From Octopus sinensis (lineage: Eukaryota), in the NCBI RefSeq assembly GCF_006345805.1, contig NC_043005.1, forward strand, positions 76,570,001-76,634,000: a stretch of DNA of 64,000 nucleotides, in the 5' to 3' direction. The position numbers and the translations under genes were made by a program. This document shows positions 20,236 through 38,576 of the stretch, piece by piece. Numbering within the stretch: the first letter of the stretch is position 1; the number at the start of each line of letters is the position of its first letter. Below the pieces are notes generated by a model. The model saw only the letters and a program-made list of their open reading frames with translations. It was not told where the DNA came from and made no database searches.

Positions 20236-20762
20236 TTTTAATTTTGACCTCAATGCGTAATTGGTACTTATTTAATCGACCCCGAAAGGATGAAAGGCAA
20301 AGTAGACCTCGGCGGAATTTGAATTCAGAACGTAAAGACAAAGGAAATACCTATTTATTTATTACCCACAAGGGGCTAAACACAGAGAGGACAAACAAGG
20401 ACATACACACGGATTAAGTCGATTATATCGACCTCAGTGCGTAATTGGTACGTATTTCATCGACCCCGAAAGGATGAAAGGCAAAGTCGACTTCAGCGGA
20501 ATTTGAATTCAGAACATAAAGACAAAGGAAATACCTATTTATTTATTACCCACAAGGGGCTAAACACAGAGAGGACAAACAAGGACAGACACACGGATTA
20601 AGTCGATTATATCGACCTCAGTGCGTAATTGGTACTTATTTAATCGACCCCGAAAGGATGAAAGGCAAAGTCGACCTCGGCGGAATTTGAACTCAGAACG
20701 TAGCGGCAGACGAAATACGGCTACGCATTTCGCCCGGTTGCTAACGTTTTTGCTCGCCGCCT
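20236..20762 (-). mobile_element. Trimeric SINE array (period 184 bp) with two LINE-like tails
   Basis: Head at about 20760, then body-tail-body-tail-body; junctions read AAATAG|GTATTTC on the minus strand. Confidence 0.85.
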
Positions 20763-21324
20763 TCCTTTTGTTGCAATATTACTATTGAATTGCATTATCT
20801 TTCTTTTTCAATTAACTTTGCAAATAATGATGAATTAAATAAAATAACTGGCGTTTGCAACTTAAGTCGAGCACAAGTACTGCTGTTCTTATATATATTT
20901 CTACATATACTCTACATGGATGACTTTGATACTATTAATGTCTGGCTCAAATATTTATCGACTATGGAAGTCTTGTTTCGTTCAGCAGCTTCAATTCTTT
21001 ATTTTTTTTTTCTTTGAGATTCTACATGATTTTCATCAGAACTGAAGCCAGAACATTGAAATGAAACTCATGCTTCAATCGACTCTGACATCATACACAG
21101 TCCACTTTGATGTAAACAAGGATCCTTCACCTATTTGCCTGATAAAAAAAAGCGCGTTTTCTCTGAACATATTGTCATAGGAATAAGAGACTTTAAATAA
21201 CATAGTTCTACATAGAATGCCTGAAATCGTTTCATCATTAGTCCCTTCAGTTAGCTCTCTATCCATGTCTGTGTTTGCCTGTCAGTATGTCTGCCTGTCT
21301 GTATAACTCTCCCTAACACACACA

Positions 21325-21418
21325 CACACTATCTCTCTCTCTTTCTCTCTCTCTCTTTCTCTCTCTCTCTTTCTCTCTCTCTCTTTCTCTCTCTTTCTCT
21401 TCTCTCTCTTTCTCTCTT

Positions 21419-21497
<79 letters not shown>
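21325..21497. repeat. (CT)n microsatellite
   Basis: Seen directly; other (TA)n, (TG)n, (TATG)n and (TATC)n tracts occur throughout 1-33000 and 56800-61400. Confidence 0.95.
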
Positions 21498-21501
<4 letters not shown>

Positions 21502-22204
21502 AGGGAACGAACGGGAGAACAGCTTGAATAGATTCACACGGTTATTGCCAGTATATTAAAAGTGTCTGCTTCGTTCGTTCGCTCGTCTGTTTCTTCGTCC
21601 GTCCGTTCGATTATTTCTTTCCTTCGCTCATCTTTTCATATGTGTGTTTGTGTGTGTGTGTGTGCGTATGAGCGAGAGAAATAAAGAGAAAAAAAAAGAG
21701 AGGTAGAAAGAGAAGGAAAGAAGAGAGCGAGAGCATAAGAGGGCATGTACCTTACAAATACTTCGGAAAATTGTTATGAGTAACAAGCAGCAATTTTACT
21801 TAACTGAATATCTGTGCATTCGTTAGCTGCGCGTGCTAATTAACAAAAGTATCAATGCAGCCCGCCGATGTTTGCAATGGCTGGGTTGAAAGCTTCTTTG
21901 TATTCATCTACTTGTATTATTATACTCGTTTCAGTCATGTGACTGTGGTCATGCTGGAGCATCACCTGCCTGCGTTTAGCAAATATCCATTTGCCATTGT
22001 GAAAATAGACTGTGTTTAAATCACATCGGTGTCTGATTTACATAAACATTTTCATAAGTAGCGTTAAGCTACTTTCTCTTTCTCTCTCTCTCTCCCTCTT
22101 TCTCTCTCTCTCCCTCCCTCTTTCTCTCTCTCCCTCCCTCTTTCTCTTCCCCTTCTTTCCTGCCTTTGTCTCTGTCTGTCTGTCTGTATGTCTCTCTCCG
22201 TCTC

Positions 22205-22245
<41 letters not shown>

Positions 22246-22535
22246 AACGAATGGATTTTCGACCCCTGATGAACTAGCAACAAACAGGCGAAACTATTCG
22301 AGCGTTTATGTAGTTTGCTCTGGAGACAACACTATGGAGTAACTACAGAACTTTCTCTGCAAGGTTAAATGTTTGTCTCTCAAACGTAGTCGCACAAGCT
22401 CATCTGGAGCAGTTGATTTGTGGATGGCACATCTAATAAATCTAACATCTACGTGTCTTCCTGAAATGTGTCTTAGCTTGATCAGAGATGAAAAAAGGGC
22501 TCAGCAGTTGCAATAACGCTAGCAACATCAGCATA

Positions 22536-23091
22536 TTGGGTTGTCCGAAAAGTTTGTGCCGATTTATAGTAGCTTACCTTTCGACATGGTTGAGGCCATA
22601 AAATAGGATTTGTCTACACCTCCATTTAGAGTACAGTTTAAACTATATTTTCGTGGAAGAAGATTTATGTTCCTATAACCTGTGTTAATTCTGAAACACT
22701 TTGAAATGGAAGATAAGAATGTTCATTTTCGGCACTTGATGACTTTGGGAACCAGACAAAAATTGCTGCAGCTCAGCTGGGATGTGTTACCTCACCCTCC
22801 ATATTCATCAGATATTGCTCCTTCGGATTTCCACTTATTCAGGTCTCTGCAGAATAGTCTTAATGGTAAAAATTTAAATTCCTTGGATGACGTAAAAAGA
22901 TACCTTGGTGAATTCTTTGCCATGAAACCACCTCAATTCTGGGAAAGGGGGTATTTTCAAGTTAAAGGAAAGATGGAGACGCATTGTGCAACAAAATGGT
23001 TAATATTTGGTTGATTGAAAATGTAATGGCAAGTATTTATTGACCTTTTTCTTTCATTTAAAAATAGGCACGAACTTTCCGGACAACCCAA
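22536..23091 (+). mobile_element. Internally deleted mariner (Tc1/mariner) element
   Basis: TA TSDs; TIRs TTGGGTTGTCCG(A/G)AAAGTT(T/C)GTGCC; ORF 22682-23014 fuses N-terminal MEDKNVHFRHLM to C-terminal HPPYSSDIAPSDFHLFRSL (YSPDLAP motif). Confidence 0.92.
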
Positions 23092-23650
23092 TACATTCAT
23101 ACATACCTACATACATACACACAAACACACACACACACATACATACATACATACATACATACATACATACATACATACATACATACATACACACACACAT
23201 ACATACATACATACATACATACATACATACATACATACATAGAGCATTTTCATCAAAACTTCTAGCAAGTAGAAACATAAACCCGGTACAGCTGCCCTGC
23301 TGGTGTGAATAACTCTTCGAAATCAAAGAGTACAAGAAATAACAGTTATTTCGAAACCTCCAGGACCTATAACCTATTACATTGAAACTCCAGGTCCTAT
23401 ACTAAATTCTCATTTATACCAATAATAATTCGTACACTTGGTTTTGCTAATAAAGTACTAAGTGGAAATCCGATTGAACTAAATTTTTCAGAAAAAAAAA
23501 ATCAACTCTGCGAACAAGCACATTAGAAATACTATCTATAAGTAGAAGAATGAAAACATCACAGTCTTTTTTCAAATTTAGAATATAATATTATGTTTGT
23601 TATCAACATTCCAATGGTAGAGCTTTGTATCATTGTTAGACACCAACCTC

Positions 23651-24070
23651 GGATCTTTTCGGTTTGAACGGCAGTTTTTAACATAATTTCTAGATAACTA
23701 AAAAATTATAAACTTCGTATACTGGTAGAATGTGTTTATAAAACATCTTTTCTCTTGCCTTTATTGAGAAAATTCTATAGTTTGTAAAATATTTGTTGTT
23801 TTTTTCTTCAATTTCTGCAATTTCAACCAATCACTGATATCCATTGAGGTAAACAACATTCTGTGCCGTATGAATATGTCCCTCGTTTAAGAAACAGATT
23901 GGGTTTATCTACATTTGTGAAGAAAAAAAATACCCTTCACCCCACCCCTAACCCTAACCCTAACCCTAAAATAGATTGAAATGCAATAGATCGATACTAG
24001 GGTCATAACTATGGGTGACAATTTCATATGACACCGCTAGAAAAAACTGCCGTTCAAACCGGAAAGATCC
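23651..24070. mobile_element. MITE with GGATCTTT TIRs, 8-bp TSD and internal (CCCTAA)4
   Basis: TIR GGATCTTT(T/C)CGGTTTGAACGGCAGTTTTT; flanks CCAACCTC / CCAACCCC (7 of 8); CCCTAA tract at about 23946-23969. Superfamily (Merlin-like by GG ends and 8-bp TSD) is inference. Confidence 0.8.
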
Positions 24071-24665
24071 CCAACCCCTTCCATACAGAAAAAAACTTCA
24101 AATATCTTTAAAAAATAGAAGGGAAAACATATACTGTTAGTATATCAACCGAGCTATAGTTAAGTTCATTTGACAAAGCTATATAGCCTCCTCTAAATAC
24201 GGGAGAGAACGGAGAGGAAGTTGAAACATGTCATTCATGGCCAATCCAAGGTTACACGTCTTGTTATTTTGTTTAACACACTCTACGCTGACTTATTTAA
24301 TTTTTAAATAATATAGATTAGGTGAGTTGGTATTAGTTAATGTGATACATACCATAGAGCAACATAAACCTCGTTGAACTTTGTGACACTTTATTAACAC
24401 AAAGCTAAGTCAATAATATACACAATGCTGTGCATACACGCACACCCGCCCACAATAATACATACCATTCCACAAACAAAGGCACACTATGGAAAAACCA
24501 TTTACAGATACATGCGACGCATACATGCTTACGCTCAGACACACCTCTGAGCACTAATTGGTGACTAGCTATACCACGCTTACTTAAATATTTCATAACC
24601 CATTCTTCATATACGTGTTTGTGTGTTTCTGTGTGTGCAGATACATGTATAAATATGTATGTGTG

Positions 24666-24716
<51 letters not shown>

Positions 24717-24837
24717 ATATCTATCTATATATCTATATATCTCTCTCTATATATATACATACATCAACATACACACTGATATCAATACTGTATATATATA
24801 TACATACACATAGTATAGATATCAGTGTGTATGTAGA

Positions 24838-24913
<76 letters not shown>

Positions 24914-25229
24914 AGGAGAGAGAGAGATGAGTGTGTGTGTGTATGTGTGTGTGCGTACGTGTTTCTTTTTTTGTTTCAGTCGTTAGACTGCGGACATGCT
25001 GGGGCACCGCCTTGAAGCGTTTTAGTCGAACAAATCGACTCCAAGACTTAGTTTCAATGACTCCAAAACCTAGTACTTATTCTATCGTCCTCTAGTCTCA
25101 AACCCGCTTAGTTACGGGGATGTAAAAACACCAGCACCGGTTGTGAAACGGTGGCATAGTACAAACACAAACACACAGATATCTATCTATGTATTTATCT
25201 ATGTATCTATCCATATATATGTATATATA

Positions 25230-25300
<71 letters not shown>

Positions 25301-25302
<2 letters not shown>

Positions 25303-25586
25303 AGGCGCAATGGCCTAGTGGTTAGGGCAGCGGACTCGCGGTCGCAGGATTGCGGTTTCGATTCCCAGACCGGGCGTTGTGTGTGTTTATTGAGCGAAAA
25401 CACCTAAAAGCTCCACGAGGCTCCGGCAGGGGGTGGTGATCCCTGCTGTACTCTTTCTCCCACTCTTTCTTCTGTTGGCCTGCTCGCTTAGCCAGCGTGG
25501 TGGCGTCATTCGAAGGCTAAAACAATGCGAACGCATTGTGACCAGCGATGTGTAACAACATCTGATGGTCTGGCCGGTCATGTGAT

Positions 25587-25590
<4 letters not shown>
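25301..25590 (+). mobile_element. tRNA-derived SINE
   Basis: GGAGGCGCAATGGCCTAGTGGTTAGG..GGTTTCGATTCCCAGACCGGG head; body shared with 5500 and 27373 copies but different tail. Confidence 0.8.
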
Positions 25591-25622
<32 letters not shown>

Positions 25623-26065
25623 CGACGGGCTTCTTTCGGTTTCTCTCAACTTAATCGACTCTCAAGGCATTGGTCGATACTACTCCGTGCAAGGGGTCAC
25701 GGAGTGAGACTAAACCCGGAACTGCGTGGTTGGAAAGTAAGCTGCTTACTACACAACCTGCGCCTACAACCATAAACAGCGTGAAACTGACAGAGAGATT
25801 TTAAGGAAGTAATTAAAAATATTTTCAATAACTCGGGGAATGCTCTTCAAGTTCAAAACATTTAAATCTTTATCAGATCGTATCCACTAGCTAAAAGTAC
25901 CCAGTGTAGGAGTCGTTACCACAGCAGCAATGCAAAATAATTGGGGACAGATCAAATCCCCGTCTTAATCTTCACATTAATGTAATTTCGTTTCACTTAT
26001 GCTGTTACTTTTCCTTAATACGAACGCTAAAATGTCGTAATTGATCGACCTTCCATAGTGTAATA

Positions 26066-26308
26066 GTGGAGTTGCGTGGCTTAGTGGTTAGGGTGTTAGC
26101 ACCATGAGCGTAAGATTGTGGTTTCGATTCCTGGACCGGGTGACGCGTTGTGTTCCTGAGCAAAACATTTCATTTCACGTTGCTCCAGTCCACTCCGCTG
26201 GCAAAAATGAGTAACGCTGCGATGGACTGGAGTCCTATCCAGCTGGGGAACACATACGCCATGAAAACCAGGCCCATGAGCCTGGCTAGGCTTTAAAAGG
26301 GCGCATAT
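26066..26308 (+). mobile_element. tRNA-derived SINE
   Basis: TGGCTTAGTGGTTAGG..GGTTTCGATTCC head; tail shared with 5500 copy. Confidence 0.75.
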
Positions 26309-26620
26309 ATTTATTTATTATATTGTAATAGGCCGTTATATACGGTAAAAAGTAACTAATCATGAATGCTTTTAAATCTTAGTAGAATTTTAGCAATTTT
26401 GAGGGTAGAGTGAAGTTGGTAACATCGACTCCACTGCTAGCTTTTTTTTTTTTTTAATCGAACCTGAATGGATGAAGAACAAAGTCGGCCTCGGCAATAT
26501 TTGAACCCAGAACGTAAAGAGTCGTAAGAAATGCCAGTGCGATAACGTCTCAGCCAACGTGCAGCCTTCAGAAACTGAGAAAAAAACTGATAAATAATTA
26601 TAAAAAAAGATAAAAATTCG

Positions 26621-26981
26621 GGATCTTTTCACTTTGACCGGCAGATTTTTAAAATAATTTCTTTGTAGCTGAACACTTTTAAACTTCGTGTACTGGTAGT
26701 GTGTTACGTAAAACATCTTTTTCTCTTGGCTTTCTTGAGAAAATTCTGTAGTTTGTAAGCTATTTGTTACGGCAGAAATTGTATTCACTTCAATAGACGT
26801 CGTTGATTTGTTGAAATTGTCGAAATGCAAGAAATTAAACAACAAATAGCTTACAAACTACAGAATTTTCTCGAGAAAGCCAAGAGAAAAAGATGTTTTA
26901 TGTAACACACTACCAGTATACGAAGAAATTATTTTACAGAGAAATTATTTTAAAAATCTGCCGGTCCAAGCGAAAAGATCC
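26621..26981. mobile_element. Palindromic MITE, GGATCTTT TIR family
   Basis: Long inverted arms (about 140 bp) starting GGATCTTTTC and ending GAAAAGATCC; flanks AAAATTCG / AATTTTCG (6 of 8); internal sequence related to 23651 and 28003 elements. Confidence 0.8.
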
Positions 26982-27372
26982 AATTTTCGAGGTGAAGTTC
27001 AATCCACCACCTGGCTATCAGTAGTCTTCATTGAAGCCATTTCTTTTGTTGACACTATCAACAGTTTCCAGCCTAAGCACAATACAATACTTTGGTGCAC
27101 TGCTTCTTATTCTAATGCACATGCGTAATGCCATTGATTTTCAGAAGTTGCATGCGACAGTCAATCTCTAGTAGAGAACTATAGCCATGCATAACAGCGA
27201 CCCGGCTTCAAAATGTAAGTAACACTTAGAAGACCGCTCTATTTGCTACCGGGTCATTCTGTTGCCACTGCCTGTCAGATGCCGAGTTTAAGTGGAATAG
27301 TAATAGAATCAATTTGACTGACAATTTTATGTTCTATGTCAGAAATTTTTATTTATAGAATACCTTATATAT

Positions 27373-27680
27373 GTGGAGGCACATGGCCTAGTGGTTAAAG
27401 CAGCGAACTCACGGTCGAGGAAACGAGGGTTTGAATCTCAGACCGGGCGATGTGTGTGTTTATGAGCGAAACACCTAAGCTCCACGCGGCTCCGGCAGAG
27501 GGTAATGGTGAACTTCTGCTGACTCTTTCGCCACAACTTTCTCTCTCTCTTTCCTCCTGCCTCTTGCAGCTCACCTGCGACGGACCGGCGTTCCATCCAG
27601 GTGGGGAATCTATACGCCAAGGAAACCGGGAATCCGGACCTATGAGCCAGGCGTGGCTCGAGAAGGAACAAAAAAAAAAA
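27373..27680 (+). mobile_element. tRNA-derived SINE
   Basis: GGAGGCACATGGCCTAGTGGTTA head, family body, A-rich end. Confidence 0.78.
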
Positions 27681-28002
27681 ACAAACACCTTATATATAAA
27701 CACGAATACATTCACACATATCCTGTGTAGATTAAGTGAAGGCGAGTGGCTTAGCGGTCACGATCGTAAGGTGGTGAGTTCAAGCCCTGGCGATGCGTTG
27801 TACTTGAACAAGACACTTTATTTCACGTTACTCCAGTTCGCGTAGGAGTTCTATCTGTAATTCAAAGGGCCAGATTTGTTACATTCTGTGTCACGCTGAA
27901 TCTTCCTGAGAACTGCGTTAAGGGTACGCGTGTCTGTGGAGTGCTCAGCCACTTATACATTAAATTCCCAAGTAGGCTGTTTCATTGATTGGATCAACTG
28001 GG

Positions 28003-29460
28003 GGATCTTTTCCTTTTGATAGCCAGATTTCAACACAATTTCTAGTTAACTAAACACTTTAAAACTTCGTATACTGGTAGAATGTGTCAAAAGAAAACAT
28101 TATTTTCACTTGGCTTTTTTGATAAATTTGTAATTCGTTTGTTTAACGTAGTTTAATTTTTCGAATTTTAACCAATCCTATGCTCTCTTTTGAGCTGAAA
28201 TCATTTGCTGCGTTATCTATATTGATAAACAAACGAGGAGGGTTGTGTTGGCATGTGCTAGAAACAACAGCCATATCTCTTAAATCGATGAATTTCGTCG
28301 CCCAATAAAAATATTAACGATATTTTTTGAATATTTTCTTTATTTATTTTTGTACCAAAAAGGCTTCTCCCATGGTTTTGAAGGGCCAAAAACAACAAAA
28401 ACAAAACAATAATATGCCTAAATCGGTCTACAGTAGGATATGAGGGTGCGTGGAGTGTGGGTCGTATTGTAAAAATTTGCGAAATATTTTTTCATAAAAG
28501 GATGCCCCAGCTTGTCGGAGGCTGTGATATAAATTGGGAAAAAAATCCTCGACACCAGTGCGTAATTGGTACTTAATTTATCGACCCTGAAACGATGAAA
28601 CATTGATCCCCCATTTCTGGTTTATTTACCTTTTGTGTAAATTTGTTCCGGCAAGGGGCAAAACACAGAGGGGACAAAGCATGAGAGACAAAAGTATTAA
28701 GTCGATTCTATCGACACCAGTGCGTGTGTGCGTAACTGGTACTTAATTTATCCCTAACCCTAACCCTAACCCTAAACCTAACCCTAAGCCTAACACCTAA
28801 CCCTAAACCTAACCCCTAACCCTAACCCTATCTCGTGACAGCCTTCCGGCATCGGTCGCTAGCTTTGGTTAGGTTTAGGGTTAGGGGTTAGGTTCAGGGT
28901 TAGGGGTTAGGTTTAGGGTTAGGGTTAGGGTTAGGAGTTAGGGTTAGGGTTAGGGTTAGGGGTTAGGTTTAGGGTTAGGGTTAGGGTTAGAGGTTAGGTT
29001 TAGGGTTAGGGTTAAGGTTAGAGTTAGGGATAAATTAAGTACCAGTTACGTACTGGGGTCGGTCTAAACAACGGCAGTAATTCGTTATCGATATTGATAA
29101 ATAAACGTGAATTTACTAATAATCGTAAAGAAAAAATTTACTAATAATCGTAAAGAAAAAAAATCCCACCGTGGGGCCGGTAGGTTAGCCTGATATCGGA
29201 CTCACGAACGCTACATTACGAACAAAACGGATGTTGTCTCAGTTTTTAGTCGCAGCAAATGATTTCAGCTCAAAAGAGAGCATAGGATTGGTTAAAATTC
29301 GAAAAATTAAACTACGTTAAACAAACGAATTACAAATTTGTCAAAAAAGCCAAGTGAAAATAATGTTTTCTTTTGACACATTCTACCAGTATACGAAGTT
29401 TTAAAGTGTTTAGTTAACTAGAAATTGTGTTGAAATCTGGTTATCAAAAGGAAAAGATCC
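28003..29460. mobile_element. 1.46-kb DNA element with about 209-bp TIRs (GGATCTTT family) carrying captured SINE fragments and telomeric repeats
   Basis: 28003-28212 is the reverse complement of 29251-29460 with about 2 mismatches; TCAACTGG duplicated at 27994-28001 and 29461-29468. Confidence 0.88.
28752..29029. repeat. Interstitial telomeric cassette (CCCTAA)n - 36-bp spacer - (TTAGGG)n
   Basis: C-rich array 28752-28830, spacer 28831-28866, G-rich array 28867-29029; degenerate units. Confidence 0.92.
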
Positions 29461-30233
29461 TCAACTGGAAAACTCGTCGTAATCGACGAAGTGCCAGTAT
29501 AGAATAAACAAGTTCCAATTCTGGACGACCGAGAGGAATATATACACATTTAGGCGTGCACTTTTAAATTGATATCTTAACGTATATATGCAAGAACATA
29601 GATATAAAATACACACAGATCTATAAACACGTAAATGCATGTACATGGACGTTGACGAGTGGTCGCTTACAAATGCATAAATCAACGTTTTCTAGGACGA
29701 TGCAGTAGGTGAACAGTGTTGCATGTACTTTAATGAGTCATGGACGTCTAAGAATGAATGAAAAGCCCTATTCAACATGTGTGAGTCATCAGTAAATCTT
29801 CAGAACATTTCACTTAGTTGCTATGATTCGTCGTCTCTTTTGATTGATAAGCCAAAGCTAATTTGAAGTGTGTGCATGAGTGTGTATACGTGCGTATGTA
29901 AGCGCGTGTCTACCTCTGTGTTGATTGTCGTAACTTCTGTTCTAAGTTGTGTTAGTAAATGCTGATTAATATTTTCTAGCAAAAGGGAACCAGAAATGTA
30001 TGAAAGAAATAAAAACATTAAGAACGAAAATAAACCGAAAGAAAAAATCAATAGTTCTACAAGTTGCTATGGAAATGGCAACTTGGGAATGGTTTTGTCC
30101 CGTTTCGAAGCTGGACACTCGGCTTGATTGTTAACATCAACTAGAATAATATTCATCTATATATATATATATAGTGGTTTCGCTCCAACACCGCTCATGT
30201 CTCTTTGAGACATTTAGAAATTTAATATTTCTA

Positions 30234-30265
<32 letters not shown>

Positions 30266-30269
30266 ATAG

Positions 30270-30338
<69 letters not shown>

Positions 30339-30412
30339 TATATTCTAGCTTTCACTTGACATAAGAAATACTGAATACAATTGTACACGTTTGTTTTGGT
30401 AACATTTCAACG

Positions 30413-30790
30413 TTTATTACCAACGCCTTGGCGAAGGCGGAAGTATTGTTTCAGTCGCGTTTGTTTGTTTCTTTATTTATTGTGAACAAGTTATCTCAAG
30501 AACTGCTGGATGGTTTCGGATGAAACTTTCAGGGATGTTTGGCCTTATGACTAGCTCGAACTGATTAGAGTTTGGGATAGATCTGTTACCGGATAAGGAT
30601 TCTGGATAATTTTTCCAGATTTTTTACTTAATTTTTGAGAGCGGTCGGGTTCATTTGTAGTATTCTCGTTTGTGAGAGCAGTCGAGTATATTTCAGATAT
30701 TCTCATTTTAAAAATCATCTCCAGCTACTCGTTGAGAAGACGTTAGTGTTGCTTTGGCAGAGGTTTGCGCTCGTTGAGTGCTCTTGTTTT
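30413..30790 (+). mobile_element. Helentron-associated (HINE/DINE-1-like) non-autonomous element
   Basis: 5' TTATTACC..CGCCTTGGCGAAGGCG, (GTTT)n, core ...GGATGAAACTTTCAGGG, 3' GGCAGAGGT followed by hairpin GCGCTC-GTT-GAGTGC and T-run; architecture typical of HINEs. Confidence 0.62.
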
Positions 30791-31143
30791 TGATTTTACT
30801 ACTATAAATGAATATTAGTTTCAAATTTTGGCACAAGGTCAGCAAATCCAGGAGAATGCATAAATTGATCATACGGATGCTTAGTACTCAACTATTACTT
30901 ATTTTATCGACTCCGGAAGGATGAAAGGGAAAGTAGATCCAAAGTGGTATTTGAACTCAGAAGGTAAAAGTTAGAAGAAATGCTGCTAAGCAATACATCC
31001 AGCTCGAAGCCTTACAATTATATGATATTAAAGTTTCTTTATTTCTAAGTATATCAATTTGAATTATTTGCTCTGAAAAACGCATACTGCACTTACAAAA
31101 GATTCTCCGTCTCTCTCTCACACAAACACACATTCTCTCTCTC

Positions 31144-31229
<86 letters not shown>

Positions 31230-32059
31230 CTGTGTTAAGAAACTAATGATATCCGTGATGTGTGTCTCCAAAATACCAGCTATGTATTCTATGTTCTTTG
31301 CATAAAAATAAATATGGAAAAATATATTGATTATTATCATTTTTTTTTTTGTTACCAGCCTTAACAACAAAATATAGATATTTAAAAGTTGCGCAGGCTG
31401 TATTTAATAGATATTGTATTTATTTCTTTTCAAAACAACAATATATTTCTTTGCATACGTCGTGCAATAAATTATAAAAGTGTAAGAAACATTTCCAGCC
31501 AGTGAAGCGTCTGATTTTAATATGAAAATCTTATAAAAGTATTGCTTCTCCTGCTTGTGCTGGTCGTGTTGTTTGGAAGAACAAAACATCATTATATGTA
31601 CATCACTATAAAAAAAGGCAGACCAAACGAATATATCGCAATATGCGCAACAAATTGGATGCTTGAACGAGTTCAAAGTTCAGTTTGTCAAACATTTCAA
31701 AAATTAATGTTTCTCAACACGTCCCAAAGTGACTTTTTTAAATATTAAGATGGAAACATTTAATATAAAAGAAATTTATGAATTCACTAAATTGCATTCG
31801 ACAATACAATGTTACATATTTTTTTATAAAGAAATATCTTGGATCTTGTAGAATTTATAAAATCGTTTGAGATTTTGTAAATTTGTATTGTAGTTAAGAG
31901 TTTTTAGAGAATTGTATATAAACTTAATTACAGAAGCCAAGGATTTACATATTTTTAATATTATATTCGAACTGCGACATCGATTACAGATTACCACAGC
32001 TCACTTACTAGATCACAACAGTGGCACATAGGCACGCACGCATACATAATACATTATTA

Positions 32060-32099
<40 letters not shown>

Positions 32100-32431
32100 C
32101 ATACATACTAGTGAGTGGACAAACGAAAGAAAGACAAACACAGACACACAAACATATACATGAATATATATATATATATATGTAATTAATAATAATAATA
32201 TTAGGGAATAAATCCAAACTTACAGGGAAAAATTACATTTAGGATTAAATCCAATTTTATAGTATAAATATATTATATTATATTATATTAAATTAGAGAT
32301 AAAACCACTATTAGGCAAATCAAACAGTGAAAAACATAAGCCAATACATAAAATTAATTTAAAAGTATAAAAGTTAAAAATTAAAAAATTATTAAAATAA
32401 TTTAAACTTATAAATTTTAAATATATATATA

Positions 32432-32471
<40 letters not shown>

Positions 32472-32520
32472 TTTTATATTTATATATTATTTTGTTTATT
32501 AATTAATTAATTTATTTTTT

Positions 32521-32668
32521 AACGACGAGCTTCTTTCAGTTTCCGTCTACCAAATCCACTCACAAGGCTTTGGTCGGCCCGAGGCTATAGTAGAAGACAC
32601 TTGCCCAAGTTGCCACGCAGTGGGAATGAACCCGGAACCATGTGGTTGGTAAGCAAGCTACTTACCAA
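32521..32668 (-). mobile_element. SINE 5' half
   Basis: tRNA-like head and core shared with 9170 copy. Confidence 0.72.
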
Positions 32669-33325
32669 GCTTTCTATCAAGTTTACTGAAAAGTATCAAT
32701 ATTTGCAATCTTCCCATTTACATACTTAGTGGACGCCTTCATTATGGAAAGTACTATTTTGAGGCTTAACTATAATACATACAAAGCAATTTCTTCGACA
32801 AATTCCACTCTTCTATCTGCTTAAATATTCTTATTAAACTAGTAGATCACTAACACTGGTGACATTTCTAGCGTATTTCTATATAACGCAAAAAGAAAAA
32901 ATTACAGGTTATCATATAATTTCTTGCTGTTATAGACTTTAGCATATAACCATCGAATATTTGAATAATAAAGGATGCAAAATTTAGTACCAAAATCTAC
33001 ATAAAAACAGAAACCAATTTATTGGAATATTTCCTGTCTGGAATATTTATACACAATACTTCTGCTTTGTGTTTCAAATGTACGATTATTTGATGAAGAT
33101 ATTGTTGTTGAATTTAAAAGTTAGTAGATTACTGTTGCTGTGTTAATTTAAATCACTGTTATTTTGGTGTCTTTTCAATAAGACGGTTAGTGACCTTCGT
33201 GCGAAGGTTGTGTACGTAGTTTCCCCCCCCCCGCGGGGGAATTATTGTGTGTCTTCGTGTATGAAACACATCCAAAAACAAAAAAAAAAAAAAAATATTT
33301 TTCTACAAACGGCTGCAAAGCCAGA

Positions 33326-34677
33326 ATGTCTTTGGAAGGCAGTGAATGCAAACTGGAAGAAAAACTCGAAATGGAATTCCCCATTTCCTATTCACCTATC
33401 TCAGGTGATGAAGACTCTCAAGCCTCGGGTGAGGGAAGCTCGCCGGCGGTGACACCGGAAAAAGAATCGGCGGTAACGCCAGGAAAAAAGGCCCCAGCAA
33501 AAAAGTTTGCGGAAGTTGTAGGGCGCAAACAGAAAAACATAAATATAGAAAACCTGGATAAATATGAAGACCTTCTAAAAAAGAAGGAAATGAAATTGCA
33601 GTTAAAAAAGATGTGGAAAAAAAGGAAGAGATTGAAAAGAAAAGAATTATTTACAAGACATACAGCATGACTACAAAAAGTATACAAAAAGTGGAAGAGT
33701 GTAAAATAGAGGAGTGCCTGAAGGCAATCAGAAAAGATATCACATATATAAACAGAGGAAGACGGTTCGGAACGGTAGAAGTGAGGTTCAGGACCGAAGA
33801 AATAGCTAAGAGGCTATCTACAGAACCTCAGAAAGCAGGAAACCTAGTCCTTCTACCCTTGTACAAAGGAAGAAGGACTTCAAAGATAGTGATGAGGAAT
33901 ATTCCCCCAGAGGCGGACGCCTCATGCCTGGTGGCGGCAGTGATGCTGGGCCTGAAGGAAAAAATCAATATCCTCCAAGCTACAGTGGAGGAGGAGGGAT
34001 TTTGGCAGGGCCAGATTATCACAATGGCAATACAAGCGGAGGCCCAGACACTGGAAGAAATACCAGAGGTGCTGAGGCTCGATGAGGAGGAGAGAGTACT
34101 AGTATTTGTAGAAGGAAGAAAACCGAGGTGCTTCGGCTGCGGAAAAAAGGGACACGTAAGAGCGGAGTGTCAACCTAAACCGCAGGTAGAAGCACCGTCG
34201 GAAAAAGAAGAAGCGGAGAAGAAAAAGAAAACAGAGGAAACCAAAGAGGTGGAAAAAGCTGCAAGTGGTGCAGAAAAGGAAAAAGAAAACGAAAAAGAGG
34301 AGGGGTGGTCTAAAGTTACCAAAAAAAAACGGAAAACTGAAACCACCCCTCAAGAAGAAGAAAACCTGAAGAAAAGAAAAGAGGTTACTTCTTCATTTAT
34401 GGCCATTAAGGCTACCAACAACAGACTTGTCAATGTGTTGGCAGCCATGGCCAAGGTGGAACGAATAAGAAAAATGAAAGACTTTATCATATACAAAATA
34501 GGCCGGAAGGACTACAGGAGGATAAAATCCGAATTCTTCCATGACGTGGGCCCTCTGAGACTGGACATGTCTCCATATCTATACGAGGGCCTACGTCGGA
34601 CTCCCCCACGAGCCAAGGAAAAAAATAAAAGTGAAGAAGAAGGCGAAACTGTCGAACAAGCCAAACTACTGATATAA
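33326..34677 (+). CDS. ORF1p (about 450 aa; RRM-like region, single CCHC knuckle CFGCGKKGHVRAEC, K/E-rich); one 1-nt frameshift in an A-run near 33576
   Basis: Joins track ORFs 33245-33670 and 33613-34677; intact homologue in unit 2. Start at MSLEGSECK is inferred. Confidence 0.85.
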
Positions 34678-34685
34678 GGTAAGTG

Positions 34686-37600
34686 ATGGACTACATTTAT
34701 GTTGGTTGTTTAAATGTGCGCGGCCTGGGATCAAGCGGGAAGCAAGGTCGCTTCCTTAATGATATCAGGTCGCGCAATTTGGATGTTATTGTTGCTACAG
34801 AAACCCGGTTAAAGGGGCCAAGAGATCTACTCCCACTGTTTGACGGCTACGAGAGTTTTGTCTCTCCGGCCAGTCCTACAGGCGGGGGTGGGGTGTTGGT
34901 CCTACTAAAAAGAAACCGGGTTTTTGAGAAAAAGTTAATTTTTTCAGACCCAGAAGGTAGGCTGGTCGTCATGGATTTGACGTTCAGTAACGGTAAAGTT
35001 ATCAGACTGGTTGCAATTTACGCACCCAACAGTATAAAAGGGCAAAGTGATTATTTTCGTGATCTAGAAAACTTTCTCGGTACTTCGCATTCATTAATTG
35101 TGCTAGGAGACTTTAACACAATTTGCAAAGCGGATGTAGATTGTGTTGGCTCGAATGCAGATAGAAAAGGTAACTCATGCTTCCTGGAACTGCTAAGCCG
35201 CTTTGAGCTAGCAGATCCTTATAGGTTGGAATATCCGAACGCTCCATTGTGGACATGGTCAAACAGCGACGGATCTTCCAGGTCATACATAGATAGAATT
35301 CTAATTAGAAAGGTAGACAGTAAAATAGCTAAGTGTCCACAGTTTCACCCGATAAGCTACAGTGATCATAAAATGGTCACTTGTAAGCTTGACATAGATA
35401 AGGTTAGAAATAGAGGATCCGGTTACTGGAAACTTAATACGTCCCTTTTGGCGATTAAGGAGTACAGAGACCGGATTAGGACCATAATTCAGAGGGCGCT
35501 GTCTGGTGCCATCATTAATAACAAATGGTGGTACGCCCTCAAACGAGCCATCAAGTTTGAGTCTATTAGATATAGCATAGGAGTAGTGTCTAGAGAGGCT
35601 AGCAGGGAAACTACTCTAGTTAAGGAAGTAGAGGAAGCCATGAAAACTGGCTCTGCGGCTCAGGTGGCGTCCAAGAGACTGGTGTTAAACCAGCACCTCG
35701 AGGCCAAACACATGGGCTGCATTGTCAGGGCTAGAATCCGTCATATGGGATGTGAAGGAATCAACGCCGTGAGATGGGCCCGAGTGGTGGAAGCCCGGAA
35801 TGGCAACGACGCCACGATTCGATCTTTGAAGAACCAACAAGGTGAGTTGATAGACGAACCCGAGGAGATGTGTGAGGCCTTTCAGGAGCACTTCGCTCAG
35901 CTTTTCGGTGAGTGCGGCGGGCTGGATAGGAGGAGGGCCTTTACGGACCTACTCGACGGGCTGCCGCGCTTATCGGGGCGAGATGCGGAGGGCTGTGAAG
36001 GGCCAATCACGCCTGAGGAGGTGGTGGAGGCAATGGCGGACTGCGGCGCGGGCAAGGCGCCGGGTTTGGATGGTCTACCCTACGAGTTATATAAGAGTAT
36101 GCCAGACTTGTTCGGACTCCTACTGACGGAGGTCTATGCGAACTGGCAGCAGAACGGGCTTATACCCAGATCTGTGCGCCGGGGAGTGGTGACTCTCGTC
36201 AGAAAGGACCCGAGCAAGGGGGAGTGCATTGATAATTTCAGGCCCATCACTCTGCTAAACACAGAGTTGAAGATTTTGGCCAAAGTGTTATCGAAAAGAT
36301 TGGCGCGTGTCGCGGATGGTCTGATCGGGGAGGCACAGACATGTGCCGTTCCGGGCAGAACCATTCAGGATAATCTCCATCTAATGCGGTACACTATAGA
36401 GGGGTTTAATAGTGATTCTGGCAAGGGTGGGGCACTGGTCCATTTAGACCAATCCAAAGCTTTTGATAGGGTCGACCATCGTTACCTGGTGTCTGCCCTG
36501 GCACAGTTTGGGCTGAGCCTTGGCTTCCTCAGGTGGATTATCCAAATTTACGACAACATCGACTCGGTAGTTCGGGTGAACGGCTTCTTGTCGAAGCCGT
36601 TCAAAATCAAACGCTCGGTTCGTCAAGGGTGTCCGCTCTCCCCGCTTTTGTACGTGATGGCTCTTGAGCCATTACTGCGAAAACTGAGCGGCATCCCGAG
36701 ACAGCCAGGTAATGGAAAATCAGTGTCAGCGTACGCGGACGACATCACCATCATCGTGACCGAAATGGACCACCTATGTAAAGTAGGCAAGGCCATAGAG
36801 GATTACGAGACGGTGACAGGAGCAAAAGTTAATCGCGAAAAGTCAGTCGGCTTGCAACTCGGCACCTGGAGAGGCAAGTCGATGCCTCCTGACAGCGTCG
36901 TGGGACGTTGGACGGAGGGTCCGATTAAACTGCTAGGGGTCTGGTTCGGTCCAGACCTCCAAATAGAGAAGAATTGGGGCGAGGTAACGAGCAAGGTGGC
37001 TGCAGTAGCCAAGACCTGGTCTTGGCGGTGGCTATCCTTGAAAGGGAGGGCGGAGGTGGCCAATGTGTTTATCGCATCGGTTATCACCTACCGCCTTTCC
37101 GTCGTTCCATGCCCTGATTCGTGGTTGATCAAGTTGGAAAGACAGCTCTTCTACTTCCTGTGGAAGGGCGGGAAACCACTTGTGAAACGCTCTACTTGCT
37201 GTCAACAACCGTTAAAGGGTGGGCTAGGGATGCCTTGGCTGTTGATGCGCAAACATGCGCTGAGGTTAAGACATCTGTGGCTCTACCTGGATGGTGAACG
37301 GGTGTGGTCTTCGCTAGCAGAACGGATGTTTCCCAAGTTCACCAGTTTCGGTGGATGGGAAACCTGGTTGAATCGTAGATCGAAACTGGGCACATGGTAT
37401 ACGGAGTGTCGAAAGGCTCTCCTGCTATTCCGTCGCTCGGGCAACGCATGCGGTGGGGGTTCCACCACATTCTTCTATAGAGGGTTGGTAGAGGCGAAAT
37501 GTGAAGACACCTTGGGGGAAACCCTGGGTCTCGACGATAATCAGCTGGCCAGTCTGTTCCGACGTACGTTCGAGCCGAAGACTCTGGACAACTTCCAGAA

Positions 37601-38084
37601 GTCTCTGGCATGGCAATGCTACAGAGGAGCTCTACCTGTTCGGGATAAACTCGCAAGGCACGGTGGCCAAGACAGTCCGATGTGTCCAAGATGCGGGCGG
37701 GATAGGGAAACCGTCCCGCACGCTATTGTTCATTGTTCGGTCGTGTCTGAGGTGTGGGTTTATGCCGAACAGCTGTTGTCAAGCACACGAAGAGTACAGC
37801 TGTCGACTGAGTGTATTAAAAAAATTGACCCACCAGATTTCCTCGCGAAAGAAGGTAAGAATTGTTTTCTCGTTGTGGTAGCAATTGCGAAAGAGGTGAT
37901 ATGGAAGACGAGAATGAAAGGTATACGGTCAGGCAAGTTCATATCCGGCCCTGGGTTGATGAATTACTTCATCTACCACCTGAAAAGGAAGATAGGGCTG
38001 GAGAGAAAATGCCTGACTAAAAGAGTGTATGAAGAACGATGGAAGGATGTAGCACGGAAGTTGAGAATGGATGACACCACATAA
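34686..38084 (+). CDS. ORF2p, 1132 aa: AP endonuclease, reverse transcriptase, C-terminal CX2CX8HX4C
   Basis: EN motifs LNVRGL, ATETR, IYAPN, GDFN, SYIDRIL, SDH; RT motifs FRPITLLN, LDQSKAFDRV, QGCPLSP, YADD; CPRC...HAIVHC. Confidence 0.97.
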   Translation: MDYIYVGCLNVRGLGSSGKQGRFLNDIRSRNLDVIVATETRLKGPRDLLPLFDGYESFVSPASPTGGGGVLVLLKRNRVFEKKLIFSDPEGRLVVMDLTFSNGKVIRLVAIYAPNSIKGQSDYFRDLENFLGTSHSLIVLGDFNTICKADVDCVGSNADRKGNSCFLELLSRFELADPYRLEYPNAPLWTWSNSDGSSRSYIDRILIRKVDSKIAKCPQFHPISYSDHKMVTCKLDIDKVRNRGSGYWKLNTSLLAIKEYRDRIRTIIQRALSGAIINNKWWYALKRAIKFESIRYSIGVVSREASRETTLVKEVEEAMKTGSAAQVASKRLVLNQHLEAKHMGCIVRARIRHMGCEGINAVRWARVVEARNGNDATIRSLKNQQGELIDEPEEMCEAFQEHFAQLFGECGGLDRRRAFTDLLDGLPRLSGRDAEGCEGPITPEEVVEAMADCGAGKAPGLDGLPYELYKSMPDLFGLLLTEVYANWQQNGLIPRSVRRGVVTLVRKDPSKGECIDNFRPITLLNTELKILAKVLSKRLARVADGLIGEAQTCAVPGRTIQDNLHLMRYTIEGFNSDSGKGGALVHLDQSKAFDRVDHRYLVSALAQFGLSLGFLRWIIQIYDNIDSVVRVNGFLSKPFKIKRSVRQGCPLSPLLYVMALEPLLRKLSGIPRQPGNGKSVSAYADDITIIVTEMDHLCKVGKAIEDYETVTGAKVNREKSVGLQLGTWRGKSMPPDSVVGRWTEGPIKLLGVWFGPDLQIEKNWGEVTSKVAAVAKTWSWRWLSLKGRAEVANVFIASVITYRLSVVPCPDSWLIKLERQLFYFLWKGGKPLVKRSTCCQQPLKGGLGMPWLLMRKHALRLRHLWLYLDGERVWSSLAERMFPKFTSFGGWETWLNRRSKLGTWYTECRKALLLFRRSGNACGGGSTTFFYRGLVEAKCEDTLGETLGLDDNQLASLFRRTFEPKTLDNFQKSLAWQCYRGALPVRDKLARHGGQDSPMCPRCGRDRETVPHAIVHCSVVSEVWVYAEQLLSSTRRVQLSTECIKKIDPPDFLAKEGKNCFLVVVAIAKEVIWKTRMKGIRSGKFISGPGLMNYFIYHLKRKIGLERKCLTKRVYEERWKDVARKLRMDDTT

Positions 38085-38576
38085 ATGTAAATCAGAACGA
38101 AACCAAAAGTATCAGTGGTGAGGCGGGGCTCGTGGGGTCCGAGCTGAACCCGCCCCCACTCCACCTGTAATGTCTTCCGGTCTGTTTTTTTCATTCGATT
38201 TTTATAATTTTTGCATTTTTTGTGAATTTTTGGAATTTTTAAACTCATCCTTTTGTAACCCCATCCGTGAATCTGACCCCACATCAGGTTGTATTGTCCC
38301 CTCTTTGTTGGCCCCTTGTGGGTAATAATAAAACAGATTATTTGATGAAGATATTGTTGTTGAATTTAAAAGTTAGTAGATTACTGTTGCTGTGTTAATT
38401 TAAATCACTGTTATTTTGGTGTCTTTTCAATAAGACGGTTAGTGACCTTCGTGCGAAGGTTGTGTACGTAGTTCCCCCCCCCGCGGGGGAATTATTGTGT
38501 GTCTTCGTGTATGAAACACATCCAAAAACAAAAAAAAAAAAAAAAATATTTTTCTACAAACGGCTGCAAAGCCAGA

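What the first reader, a model, noticed from the sequence alone, without database searches (positions are those of the whole stretch)
20351..38336. The LINE 3' end is the source of the SINE tail: a Tx1/L1-clade LINE-SINE partnership
Seen: LINE terminus (38263-38336) ATCCGTGAATCTGACCCCACATCAGGTTGTATTGTCCCCTCTTTGTT-GGCCCCTTGTGGGTAATAATAAAACAG aligns with the SINE tail (reverse complement of 20535-20598 and 20351-20414) ATCCGTGTGTCTGTCC----------TTGT-TTGTCCTCTCTGTGTTTAGCCCCTTGTGGGTAATAAATAAATAG. The match includes an exact 18-mer, GCCCCTTGTGGGTAATAA. Further copies are at 12641-12704 (-), 13604-13667 (+) and, diverged, about 28652-28680 (-). Homology is co-terminal with both the LINE and the SINE monomer. 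Established: shared 3' ends mark stringent LINE-SINE pairs and are common for L2/CR1/RTE; mammalian L1 instead recognises poly(A). The LINE here has no poly(A) tail. Inference: this Tx1-like ORF2p recognises a specific 3' RNA element and mobilises this abundant SINE subfamily. I do not know whether this pair has been described.
Basis: partly seen in the sequence, partly recalled or inferred. Interest (0 to 1): 0.8.

Follow-up and report, generated by a model that had tools for sequence, protein, structure and literature searches.

The report
LINE 3' end reused inside SINE
A short mobile element (SINE) in this animal genome carries a roughly 50-64 base copy of the end of a neighbouring L1/Tx1-type LINE, a known kind of parasitic partnership, but in every copy here that piece lies inside a two-unit SINE that ends in a different, related LINE-type tail.

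Summary
The sequence match is real. The last ~48 nt of the LINE (38289-38336) align with the SINE segment at 40/46 to 41/49 identity (z = 10-17), and the 18-mer is exact seven times.

The direction is LINE to SINE. Relatives of this LINE at about 40% ORF2 identity, from other organisms, end the same way: a C-rich box, a 4-bp hairpin with a C(U/A)UGU loop, AAUAAA, then ...CAG with no poly(A). The hairpin stem shows compensatory changes.

Two points change the reading.
- The LINE-like "tail A" is internal in all four SINE loci that carry it. Those are dimers or a trimer, and in the two dimers with intact ends the target-site duplications enclose the whole element, which ends in a different "tail B".
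- Tail B, which most SINE copies carry, does not match the window LINE. It matches the 3' ends of related LINEs found elsewhere.

The SINE family has therefore borrowed tails from this LINE lineage at least twice. This window shows no SINE that ends in this LINE's tail. The SINE duplications and the repeat flanking the LINE share a start motif (ATTAT/ATATT) and a similar length (11-18 bp against 15-16 bp).

The "LINE" is a five-unit head-to-tail array (33084-54318), and relatives also form arrays. Membership of the L1 superfamily is supported. Tx1 specifically could not be tested. This is a new member of a known kind.

The parts
33084..54318 (+). Head-to-tail array of five LINE units, including the 16-bp flanking direct repeats
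   Evidence: Self-BLAST and junction read-out. Units are 98.4-100% identical with mosaic 100% blocks.
33085..38336 (+). LINE unit U1, full length. ORF2 runs 34686-38084 (1132 aa from the ATG; APE, RT, zf-RVT). ORF1 is split at an A6/A7 homopolymer run (33326-33670 and 33667-34677) and carries a CCHC knuckle.
38337..49061 (+). Units U2 (38337-41910), U3 (41911-45483) and U4 (45484-49061). All share one 1.67-kb internal deletion that removes ORF2 residues 23-573. U2 has an intact ORF1.
49062..54303 (+). LINE unit U5, full length. ORF2 is intact (50653-54051). ORF1 is frameshifted.
38263..38336 (+). LINE 3' terminal element of U1, repeated at the end of every unit: C-rich box, hairpin GCCC-CUUGU-GGGU at 38311-38323, AAUAAA, terminal CAG, no poly(A). 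The core homologous to SINE tail A is 38289-38336.
33084..33099 (+). GATTATTTGATGAAGA, the left copy of the 16-bp direct repeat flanking the array. The right copy is at 54303-54318, and one copy lies at each internal junction. Probably the TSD (15 bp plus 1 nt of microhomology).
   Evidence: The start motif is shared with the SINE TSDs.
20241..20761 (-). SINE trimer c20k: head, body and tail A (tail at 20535-20598); then unit 2 from position 73 with a second tail A (20351-20414); then unit 3 truncated at about position 182. A 3' TSD was not found.
12471..12860 (-). SINE dimer c12k, 5'-truncated at about position 38. Tail A is internal at 12641-12704. The right unit ends in tail B. An 18-bp TSD, ATTATTGCAATTTGAGAT, lies at 12861-12878 and 12453-12470.
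13434..13830 (+). SINE dimer c13k, full length. Tail A is internal at 13604-13667. The right unit ends in tail B, with hairpin GGGC-CUUGU-GCCC. A 16-bp TSD, AATATTCACCTCGT(C/T)T, lies at 13418-13433 and 13831-13846.
28549..28752 (-). Diverged SINE copy with a tail-A-like segment (about 28641-28700), again followed by a second SINE body (28549-28600). It abuts telomere-like repeats.
6076..6237 (-). SINE copy c6k, consisting of a right-unit-type body plus tail B. It starts within 1-2 nt of position 73. A 14-bp TSD, ATTATATTAAT(A/G)TT, flanks it.
11326..11542 (-). SINE copy c11k with a degraded tail B. A 14-bp TSD, ATATTTCGAAAGTT, flanks it.
54911..55111 (-). SINE copy c55.1k with the best-preserved tail B (...GCTGGCCTTGTGCCAAAATTAGGAAGA). 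Other tail-B or degraded copies are at 26413-26516, 30817-30992, 55615-55794, 63186-63418 and 63455-63637.

Best explanation
The window holds an L1-superfamily (Tx1-like) LINE. Its RNA ends without poly(A) in a specific element: a C-rich box, a short hairpin with a CUUGU loop, AAUAAA, then CAG. A SINE family in the same genome has taken its 3' modules from LINEs of this lineage at least twice.

Tail A (about 50-64 nt) comes from the family of the window LINE. Tail B comes from a related LINE family that is not in the window. Both tails join the SINE body at the same place (...CGACTTA|), as expected for tail exchange by template switching of the reverse transcriptase.

A monomer ending in tail A most likely existed and was copied by this LINE's ORF2p through recognition of the hairpin element. 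This step is inferred. It was later fused head-to-tail to a 5'-shortened tail-B unit. The resulting dimer has the promoter-bearing head of the left unit and tail B of the right unit. It then spread as one element, so tail A is now an internal relic.

The LINE inserted once at an ATTAT-type site, giving a 15-16-bp TSD. It was then amplified into five units by unequal exchange. This route to the array is favoured but not proven.
For: Shown:
- Tail A matches the window LINE and no other (z = 16-17). Tail B matches L007 at 27/32 (z = 11) and L004, L009, L002 and L006 (z about 7), but not the window LINE (z = 0.6).
- The 3' architecture is conserved in six LINE relatives.
- The hairpin stem is 100% paired over 4 bp, and 3 of 4 pairs change on both sides. 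The covariation score is 0.678 against 0.177 in shuffles (0/500 reach it). Slid controls score 0.28 or less.
- Whole-dimer TSDs of 18 and 16 bp flank c12k and c13k. Their 5' flanks are unrelated, so the insertions are independent.
- Both tails begin at the same body-tail boundary.
- Five SINE TSDs and the LINE's flanking repeat all begin ATTAT, ATATT, AATATT or ATAAT. The background frequency of such a start is 1.05% per position.
- L004 shows that this kind of LINE ends at CAG with a TSD and no poly(A).
- ORF2 has APE, RT and zf-RVT domains, and its best PDB match is L1 ORF2p.
- The mosaic identity among units points to unequal exchange.

Inferred: recognition of the hairpin by ORF2p, the former existence of a tail-A monomer, and template switching as the route of tail capture and of dimer formation.
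Against: - No SINE ending in tail A is seen in the 64 kb.
- The LINE units are young (0-1.6% divergence), while the tail-A SINEs differ from each other by 11-14%. Concurrent activity is therefore not shown.
- Folding energies of the 3' ends are not better than shuffles (z between +0.5 and -2.5). Support for the structure rests on 9 related sequences.
- The TSD start motif was defined after looking at the data.
- No array unit has all reading frames intact as assembled.
- The tail-B partner LINE was not found in this genome. It is inferred only from relatives in other samples.
Confidence: 0.65

Rival explanations
1. Tail A was never a SINE tail. A severely 5'-truncated (about 64-bp) dead-on-arrival copy of the LINE landed once inside a tandem SINE master copy, and it has only been carried along since then.
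For: Tail A is internal in 4 of 4 loci. The right-hand units share derived bases, so the dimer probably arose once. Heavy 5' truncation is usual for LINEs (established knowledge).
Against: Tail A starts at the same body-tail boundary where tail B starts in other copies. It ends exactly at the LINE terminus, followed by a unit start rather than by a duplicated target. A nested insertion into a monomer would be followed by the rest of that monomer, not by position 73.
Confidence: 0.15
2. Concatemers are made by the retrotransposition machinery itself. After reaching the 5' end of one RNA, the reverse transcriptase jumps to the 3' end of another RNA carrying the 3' element. This would produce LINE head-to-tail arrays and SINE dimers directly. 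The 16-mer would be a terminal redundancy of array-derived transcripts, cleaved about 21 nt after AAUAAA, and not a TSD.
For: Arrays recur in relatives from other samples: L002 (period about 6.5 kb), L009/L091 (at least 5 units, over 22 kb), and scaffold L006, which closes on itself. Single-copy L004 begins with GCAG, the last 4 nt of the unit as seen at array junctions. The SINE junction is exactly 3' terminus | unit start, and c6k starts within 1-2 nt of that same unit start. The array ends 21 nt after AATAAA. End-to-end template jumping is established for the R2 reverse transcriptase (established knowledge).
Against: On this reading the window array has no TSD, although L004 and the SINEs do. 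The 16-mer begins with the same ATTAT motif as the SINE TSDs and has their length. Three units share one internal deletion, and units show mosaic identity, both of which fit recombination. The L006 closure may be an assembly effect.
Confidence: 0.2
3. The direction is reversed: the LINE acquired its 3' end from the SINE.
For: None beyond the shared sequence.
Against: The same 3' architecture and hairpin are present in LINE relatives at 37-41% ORF2 identity from other organisms (TARA and other ENA assemblies), and no SINE body was detected in those fetched loci.
Confidence: 0.03

Closest known systems
Stringent-type LINE/SINE pairs with a common 3' tail (Okada/Ohshima model; for example eel UnaL2/UnaSINE1; 58 pairs listed in PMC3747384)
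   Same: The SINE carries about 50-64 nt homologous to, and co-terminal with, the LINE 3' end. The LINE has no poly(A). A conserved 3' hairpin has a fixed loop and variable, compensating stems.
   Different: In this window the LINE-matching segment is internal. The transposed units end in a second tail from a related LINE. Most listed pairs involve the CR1, L2 or RTE clades, not the L1/Tx1 group.
Stringent L1-clade pairs in plants and green algae (maize LINE1-1_ZM with ZmSINE2/3; Chlamydomonas L1-1_CR with SINEX-3_CR; Ohshima 2012, PMC3472496)
   Same: An L1-group LINE shares with a SINE a 3' end of about 50-80 nt. The hairpin shows compensatory mutations and conserved loop nucleotides.
   Different: Those elements end in poly(A) and are from plants or algae. 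This one is from an animal-type genome (TTAGGG-like repeats; relatives in marine samples), ends in ...AAUAAA-N-CAG, and has a different loop (CUUGU).
Tx1-Mar LINEs and SINEU in crocodilians (Kojima 2015, PMC4494074)
   Same: A SINE is linked to a Tx1-group LINE, and a shared insertion-site signature serves as evidence of trans-mobilisation.
   Different: That partnership was argued from a shared specific target (a Mariner transposon) and shared 5' heads, not from the shared 3' hairpin tail seen here. The target here is only a short AT-rich motif.
Composite or dimeric SINEs and tail exchange ('mosaic' SINE evolution; PMC4758252, PMC5786205, PMC11481361)
   Same: The SINE is modular, with one body carrying alternative LINE-derived tails. 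A former module is retained inside a longer element.
   Different: Here the internal module is a complete former 3' tail lying between two copies of the same body.
Head-to-tail LINE arrays (Drosophila HeT-A/TART, Giardia GilM/GilT; recalled from memory, not tested here)
   Same: Same-strand, directly abutting LINE units occur, and they recur across related species.
   Different: No chromosome end is evident at the array. A 15-16-bp repeat lies at each junction. There is no evidence of a telomeric role.

Membership tests
Stringent LINE-SINE pair (shared 3' tail) | SINE sequence is homologous to the 3' end of a LINE in the same genome, beyond chance | tested here: met
   40/46 to 41/49 identity, z = 10-17. 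The 18-mer is exact 7 times against 0.02 expected.
Stringent LINE-SINE pair (shared 3' tail) | The homology reaches the 3' terminus of the LINE | tested here: met
   It ends at ...AAAACAG (38336), directly before the flanking/junction 15-mer. Single-copy relative L004 ends at ...GCAG followed by a TSD.
Stringent LINE-SINE pair (shared 3' tail) | The homologous segment forms the 3' terminus of the transposed SINE | tested here: not met
   Tail A is followed by a second SINE unit in 4 of 4 loci. The TSDs of c12k and c13k enclose the whole dimer, which ends in tail B. Only 64 kb were sampled.
Stringent LINE-SINE pair (shared 3' tail) | A conserved 3' RNA structure is supported by compensatory changes | tested here: met
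   The 4-bp stem is 100% paired and 3 of 4 pairs change on both sides. The C(U/A)UGU loop varies only at its second base. No shuffle (0/500) reaches the observed score. Folding energy alone is not significant.
Stringent LINE-SINE pair (shared 3' tail) | LINE and SINE share the same insertion signature (TSD length and target motif) | tested here: met
   The LINE repeat is 15-16 bp, (G)ATTATTTG.... Five SINE TSDs of 11-18 bp start ATTAT, ATATT, AATATT or ATAAT. The background frequency is 1.05%. The motif was defined post hoc.
Stringent LINE-SINE pair (shared 3' tail) | LINE and SINE were active at overlapping times | tested here: inconclusive
   LINE units are 98.4-100% identical but have been homogenised within one array. 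Tail-A SINEs are 86-89% alike. One locus cannot give age distributions.
Stringent LINE-SINE pair (shared 3' tail) | Trans-mobilisation depends on the tail | not testable with these tools
   This needs a retrotransposition assay.
L1 superfamily (L1/Tx1 group) LINE | ORF2 has an N-terminal APE endonuclease, an RT domain and a C-terminal Cys-rich domain | tested here: met
   Pfam: Exo_endo_phos at residues 10-229, RVT_1 at 513-754, zf-RVT at 973-1025. A CPRC...H...C motif lies at residue 1001.
L1 superfamily (L1/Tx1 group) LINE | It is closer to L1 ORF2p than to other LINE groups | tested here: met
   Human L1 ORF2p scores E = 3e-68 over residues 4-869. R2 proteins match the RT domain only, at E = 1e-25.
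Tx1 clade specifically | The RT phylogeny groups it with Tx1 reference elements (for example by RTclass1) | not testable with these tools
   No Tx1 reference sequences were available. The supplement with the Tx1 alignment is not held, and relatives in the databases are unnamed.
Tx1 clade specifically | ORF1 is Type I-like (CCHC knuckle, no Transposase_22) | tested here: met
   CFGCGKKGHVRAEC in the window's ORF1. zf-CCHC in the relatives' ORF1 proteins and no Transposase_22 hit. This type is described as consistent with Tx1 in PMC5203782. It is suggestive, not diagnostic.
Tx1 clade specifically | Insertion is specific to a particular target sequence (true of many, not all, members) | tested here: inconclusive
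   Only a short AT-rich start motif is shared by the insertion sites. No common repeat or gene serves as target.
SINE (tRNA-derived) | Short, non-coding, multi-copy, flanked by TSDs, with 5'-truncated copies | tested here: met
   About 17 fragments lie in 43 kb of non-LINE sequence. Five have TSDs of 11-18 bp, and copies begin at various points.
SINE (tRNA-derived) | The head derives from a tRNA, with A and B boxes | tested here: inconclusive
   A B-box-like GAGTTCAAATTCC is present. ARAGORN and Rfam find no tRNA, even at E up to 1.

The most novel reading that the evidence does not exclude
In this lineage of marine-animal L1/Tx1-like LINEs the 3' hairpin element may serve two roles. It would be the entry site for reverse transcription, and also the landing site for end-to-end template jumps. 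Concatemers (LINE arrays in at least three organisms, SINE dimers and trimers) would then be direct products of retrotransposition. Array-derived transcripts could also start in the 3' end of the upstream unit, as in Drosophila HeT-A.
Probability: 0.2. Interest if true: 0.6.

Novelty: new member of a known kind. Interest (0 to 1): 0.4.

Why it matters
Shared 3' tails are the standard evidence that a SINE parasitises a particular LINE, and dozens of such pairs are known. Examples from the L1/Tx1 group are rare, and I found them documented only for plants and green algae. An animal lineage with a covarying 3' hairpin and no poly(A) would therefore bear on whether stringent template recognition is ancestral for the L1 group (Ohshima 2012).

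The locus also shows one SINE body carrying two successive tails from related LINEs, with the older or alternative tail fossilised inside a dimer. That is a clear example of tail exchange. The recurrent head-to-tail arrays in relatives suggest a property of the mechanism worth testing. None of this overturns current understanding.

Tried and rejected
- Rfam (gathering thresholds on the whole window; E up to 1 on one SINE dimer) and ARAGORN gave no hits. The tRNA origin of the SINE head is therefore unverified.
- Full-text searches for SINE and tail sequence strings, and for the assembly accession of the closest relative, found nothing. A search for 'L1-Tx1' with SINE, partner and tail found nothing relevant.
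- The organism could not be identified. The closest ORF2 is 57% identical on an unnamed 3-kb NCBI contig, and the cluster look-up gave no names.
- The Tx1 reference alignment of Kojima 2015 is not held as a supplement, so I made no clade phylogeny.
- Eighty more distant ORF2 relatives (27-37% identity, JGI metagenomes) lack the C-box/CTTGT-hairpin/AATAAA element. It is specific to the closer sublineage.
- Exact-match scans of viral contigs found nothing for the 18-mer and one chance hit for a SINE body motif.
- Folding energies of the 3' ends do not differ from shuffles, so I based the structure claim on covariation only.
- The edges of the relative's array could not be reached within 22 kb.
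- The 3' TSD of the c20k trimer was not found.
- Chance similarity and SINE-to-LINE transfer were considered and rejected.
Full report
**What was claimed.**

**Check of the observation.** The 18-mer GCCCCTTGTGGGTAATAA is exact at 20359 and 20543 (-) and at 38311 (+). It has 1 mismatch at 12649 (-) and 3 at 13642 (+). Shuffles give 0.02 matches. Local alignment of each SINE segment against the last 200 nt of the LINE gives 40/46 to 41/49 identities. The z-scores are 10-17 (8 for the diverged 28.6-kb copy), and no dinucleotide shuffle reaches the observed score. The strong core is 38289-38336. The extension to 38263, across a 10-nt gap, is weaker. So the homology is real.

The exact 18-mer also occurs at 41885, 45458, 49036 and 54278, which led to the first correction.

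**The LINE is an array.**
- Self-comparison shows five directly abutting units on the + strand between 33084 and 54318. U1 (33085-38336) and U5 (49062-54303) are full length.
- U2-U4 share one 1.67-kb internal deletion that removes ORF2 residues 23-573.
- Units are 98.4-100% identical, with mosaic blocks of 100% identity. U1 equals U2 in the 5' part, and U2 equals U3 in the 3' part. This points to unequal exchange or conversion.
- The 16-mer GATTATTTGATGAAGA flanks the whole array, and one copy lies at every junction.
- ORF2 (1132 aa from its ATG) has APE, RT and zf-RVT domains. Its best solved relative is human L1 ORF2p, E = 3e-68 over residues 4-869. R2 proteins match only the RT domain.
- ORF1 carries a CCHC knuckle and has no Transposase_22 domain. 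One survey describes this type as consistent with the Tx1 clade (PMC5203782).
- I could not place the RT in a phylogeny because no Tx1 reference sequences were available.
- As assembled, no unit has every frame intact. U1 and U5 have an intact ORF2 but a split ORF1 (in U1 at an A6/A7 run). U2 has an intact ORF1 but the deleted ORF2.

**Where the LINE ends, and direction of transfer.** The closest ORF2 in the protein collection is 57% identical. A group of relatives lies at 37-42% identity, from ENA assemblies and TARA Oceans metagenomes. Six of their loci end in the same architecture as the window LINE: a C-rich box (CCCCTCCCC), a short hairpin with a C(T/A)TGT loop, AATAAA, a few bases, then CAG, with no poly(A).

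L004 is a single copy in a 1.1-Mb contig. It ends ...AATAAAAGCAG and has a clean 10-bp TSD. This supports 38336 as the true terminus.

The stems differ between relatives:

| LINE | Stem-loop-stem |
|---|---|
| Window LINE | GCCC-CUUGU-GGGU |
| L002 | UGGC-CAUGU-GCCA |
| L006 | UGAC-CUUGU-GUCA |
| L004, L009 | AAGGC-CUUGU-GCCUU |
| L007 | AGGC-CUUGU-GCCU |

On a loop-anchored alignment of nine sequences, the four inner pairs are 100% paired and three of them change on both sides. The covariation score is 0.678 against 0.177 in shuffles (0/500 reach it), and slid controls score 0.28 or less.

Folding energies alone are unremarkable. Eighty more distant relatives (27-37% identity) lack the element. 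No SINE body was found in the relatives' loci fetched up to that point (L001-L009). The element therefore belongs to the LINE lineage, and the SINE segment is derived from it.

**The SINE.** BLAST with one full copy finds about 17 SINE fragments in the window. Two facts change the picture.

First, the LINE-like segment (tail A) is never terminal.
- At 12.5, 13.4 and 20.2 kb the order is head, body, tail A, then at once a second unit starting at SINE position 73.
- The diverged 28.6-kb copy also continues into a second body, starting further in.
- The 5' flanks of c12k and c13k are unrelated. Each has a TSD enclosing the whole dimer: 18 bp (ATTATTGCAATTTGAGAT) and 16 bp (AATATTCACCTCGT(C/T)T).
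- The dimer therefore transposed as one element. Its real 3' end is a different sequence, tail B.

Second, tail B is the tail of most copies. Its consensus is CCCCTCCCCCAAAATTGCTGACCTTGTGCCAAAATTTGAAAAC.
- It has the same architecture as the LINE ends: a C-box, a GGC-CUUGU-GCC hairpin, and an A-rich end.
- It does not match the window LINE beyond the loop (z = 0.6).
- It matches the relatives' 3' ends: L007 at 27/32 (z = 11), and L004, L009, L002 and L006 at z about 7.
- Tail A matches only the window LINE (z = 16-17).
- Both tails join the body at the same boundary (...CGACTTA|).

**An independent link between LINE and SINE.** Five SINE insertions have verifiable TSDs of 11-18 bp. They begin ATTATATT, ATATTTCG, ATTATTGC, AATATTCA and ATAA(C/T)TTG. 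The array's flanking repeat is 15-16 bp and begins (G)ATTATTTG. Such a start has a background frequency of 1.05% per position in the non-LINE part of the window. I defined the motif after seeing the data, so the tiny p-value is inflated. Even so, the shared start and similar length argue that endonucleases of one specificity made both kinds of insertion. They also favour reading the 16-mer as the LINE's TSD.

**Best explanation.** The SINE family takes its 3' modules from LINEs of this L1/Tx1-like lineage, and it has done so at least twice. Tail A came from the family of the window LINE, most simply as the functional tail of a monomer that this LINE's ORF2p copied by recognising the hairpin element. 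This step is inferred. That monomer became fused to a 5'-shortened tail-B unit, and the dimer has since spread through tail B. Tail B's partner is a related LINE that is not in the window.

The LINE itself probably inserted once at an ATTAT-type site and was amplified to five units by unequal exchange, starting between the TSD copies.

**Alternatives.**
- Tail A could be a single nested 64-bp LINE fragment in a dimer master. This is disfavoured by its exact boundaries.
- Concatemers could be made by end-to-end template jumping of the reverse transcriptase.
  - For: arrays recur in relatives from other samples, namely L002, L009/L091 (at least 5 units, over 22 kb) and scaffold L006, which closes on itself.
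  - For: L004 begins with the last four bases of the unit.
  - For: c6k starts within 1-2 nt of the right-unit start.
  - For: the array ends 21 nt after AATAAA.
  - Against: on that reading the window array would lack a TSD.
- Transfer from SINE to LINE is excluded by the relatives.

**Comparison with the literature.** Shared 3' tails define the stringent LINE/SINE pairs. Fifty-eight pairs are listed in PMC3747384, mostly involving CR1, L2 and RTE. L1-clade examples with a hairpin and compensatory changes are described for maize, sorghum and Chlamydomonas (PMC3472496). A Tx1-SINE link was argued from shared target preference in crocodilians (PMC4494074). Bivalve SINE partners reported so far are CR1-Zenon, Nimb, L2 and CR1 (PMC11481361). 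I found no description of this particular pair, but the organism is unidentified and Repbase could not be searched.

**Verdict.** The functional claim is only partly supported. In this window the LINE's tail is an internal relic, and the SINEs ended, and presumably moved, with another related tail. This is a new member of a known kind. It has a modestly interesting twist: an animal L1/Tx1-group LINE with a stringent-type 3' hairpin, a tail exchange frozen in a dimer, and recurrent LINE arrays.

Noticed in passing
window 28752-29029 (with 28549-28752 and 29029-29072): Telomere-like repeats lie in inverted order: CCCTAA-type at 28752-28830, then TTAGGG-type with TTAGG/TTTAGG variants at 28867-29029. 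Each arm abuts a 5'-truncated SINE body starting near SINE position 146. This is a palindromic duplication of a [telomere-like repeat + truncated SINE] junction. Its origin is unexplained.
   Followed up: partly
window 38337-49061: Three consecutive LINE units share the same 1.67-kb deletion of the APE domain and the N-terminal part of RT. It leaves an ATG-started 563-aa reading frame (for example 39966-41657) and, in U2, an intact ORF1. A non-autonomous deletion derivative has been amplified inside the array.
   Followed up: partly
L002/L003, L006, L009/L091 (relatives from other samples): LINE relatives at about 40% ORF2 identity also occur as head-to-tail arrays. L002 has a period of about 6.5 kb in a 15.9-kb contig whose name ends in 'c' (my reading, from hifiasm naming conventions and not tested, is 'circular'). 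L091 has at least 5 units over 22 kb, with the identical junction GCAG|ACTAGAAGG. TARA scaffold L006 has a 55-nt overlap between its two ends.
   Followed up: partly
L004 3687-10166: This single-copy relative has a 10-bp TSD, CTGTAGTAAG. Its 5' end begins GCAG+ACTAATAG, that is with the last 4 nt of the unit as seen at array junctions. The target's upstream flank also ends ...AGCAG, like the LINE terminus.
   Followed up: partly
window 6076-6251: SINE copy c6k, flanked by a 14-bp TSD, starts within 1-2 nt of SINE position 73, where the right-hand unit of the dimers begins. This suggests either a discrete short RNA species or a truncation hot spot.
   Followed up: no
L004, L007, L009, L002 3' ends: These relatives have a second, downstream hairpin between the CUUGU hairpin and AAUAAA (for example CUGUGUA...UACACAG, or UUUUUGUAUAUAUACAAGAA). 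It also varies in a compensatory way. It is absent from the window LINE and from both SINE tails.
   Followed up: no
window about 33220-33250 and 33576 (and the equivalent positions in other units): The LINE 5' UTR contains a C-run/GCG/G-run palindrome whose C-run length differs between units. The ORF1 frame of U1 differs from that of U2 by one A in an A6/A7 run. These homopolymer differences may be assembly errors.
   Followed up: no
whole window outside 33-54 kb: Microsatellites are very dense (AT, TC, CA, ATAC, TATC, TCCA and others), GC is about 35%, and there are about 17 SINE fragments in 43 kb. No tRNA or Rfam family was detected. The organism was not identified. A mollusc or other marine invertebrate is my guess only.
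   Followed up: no
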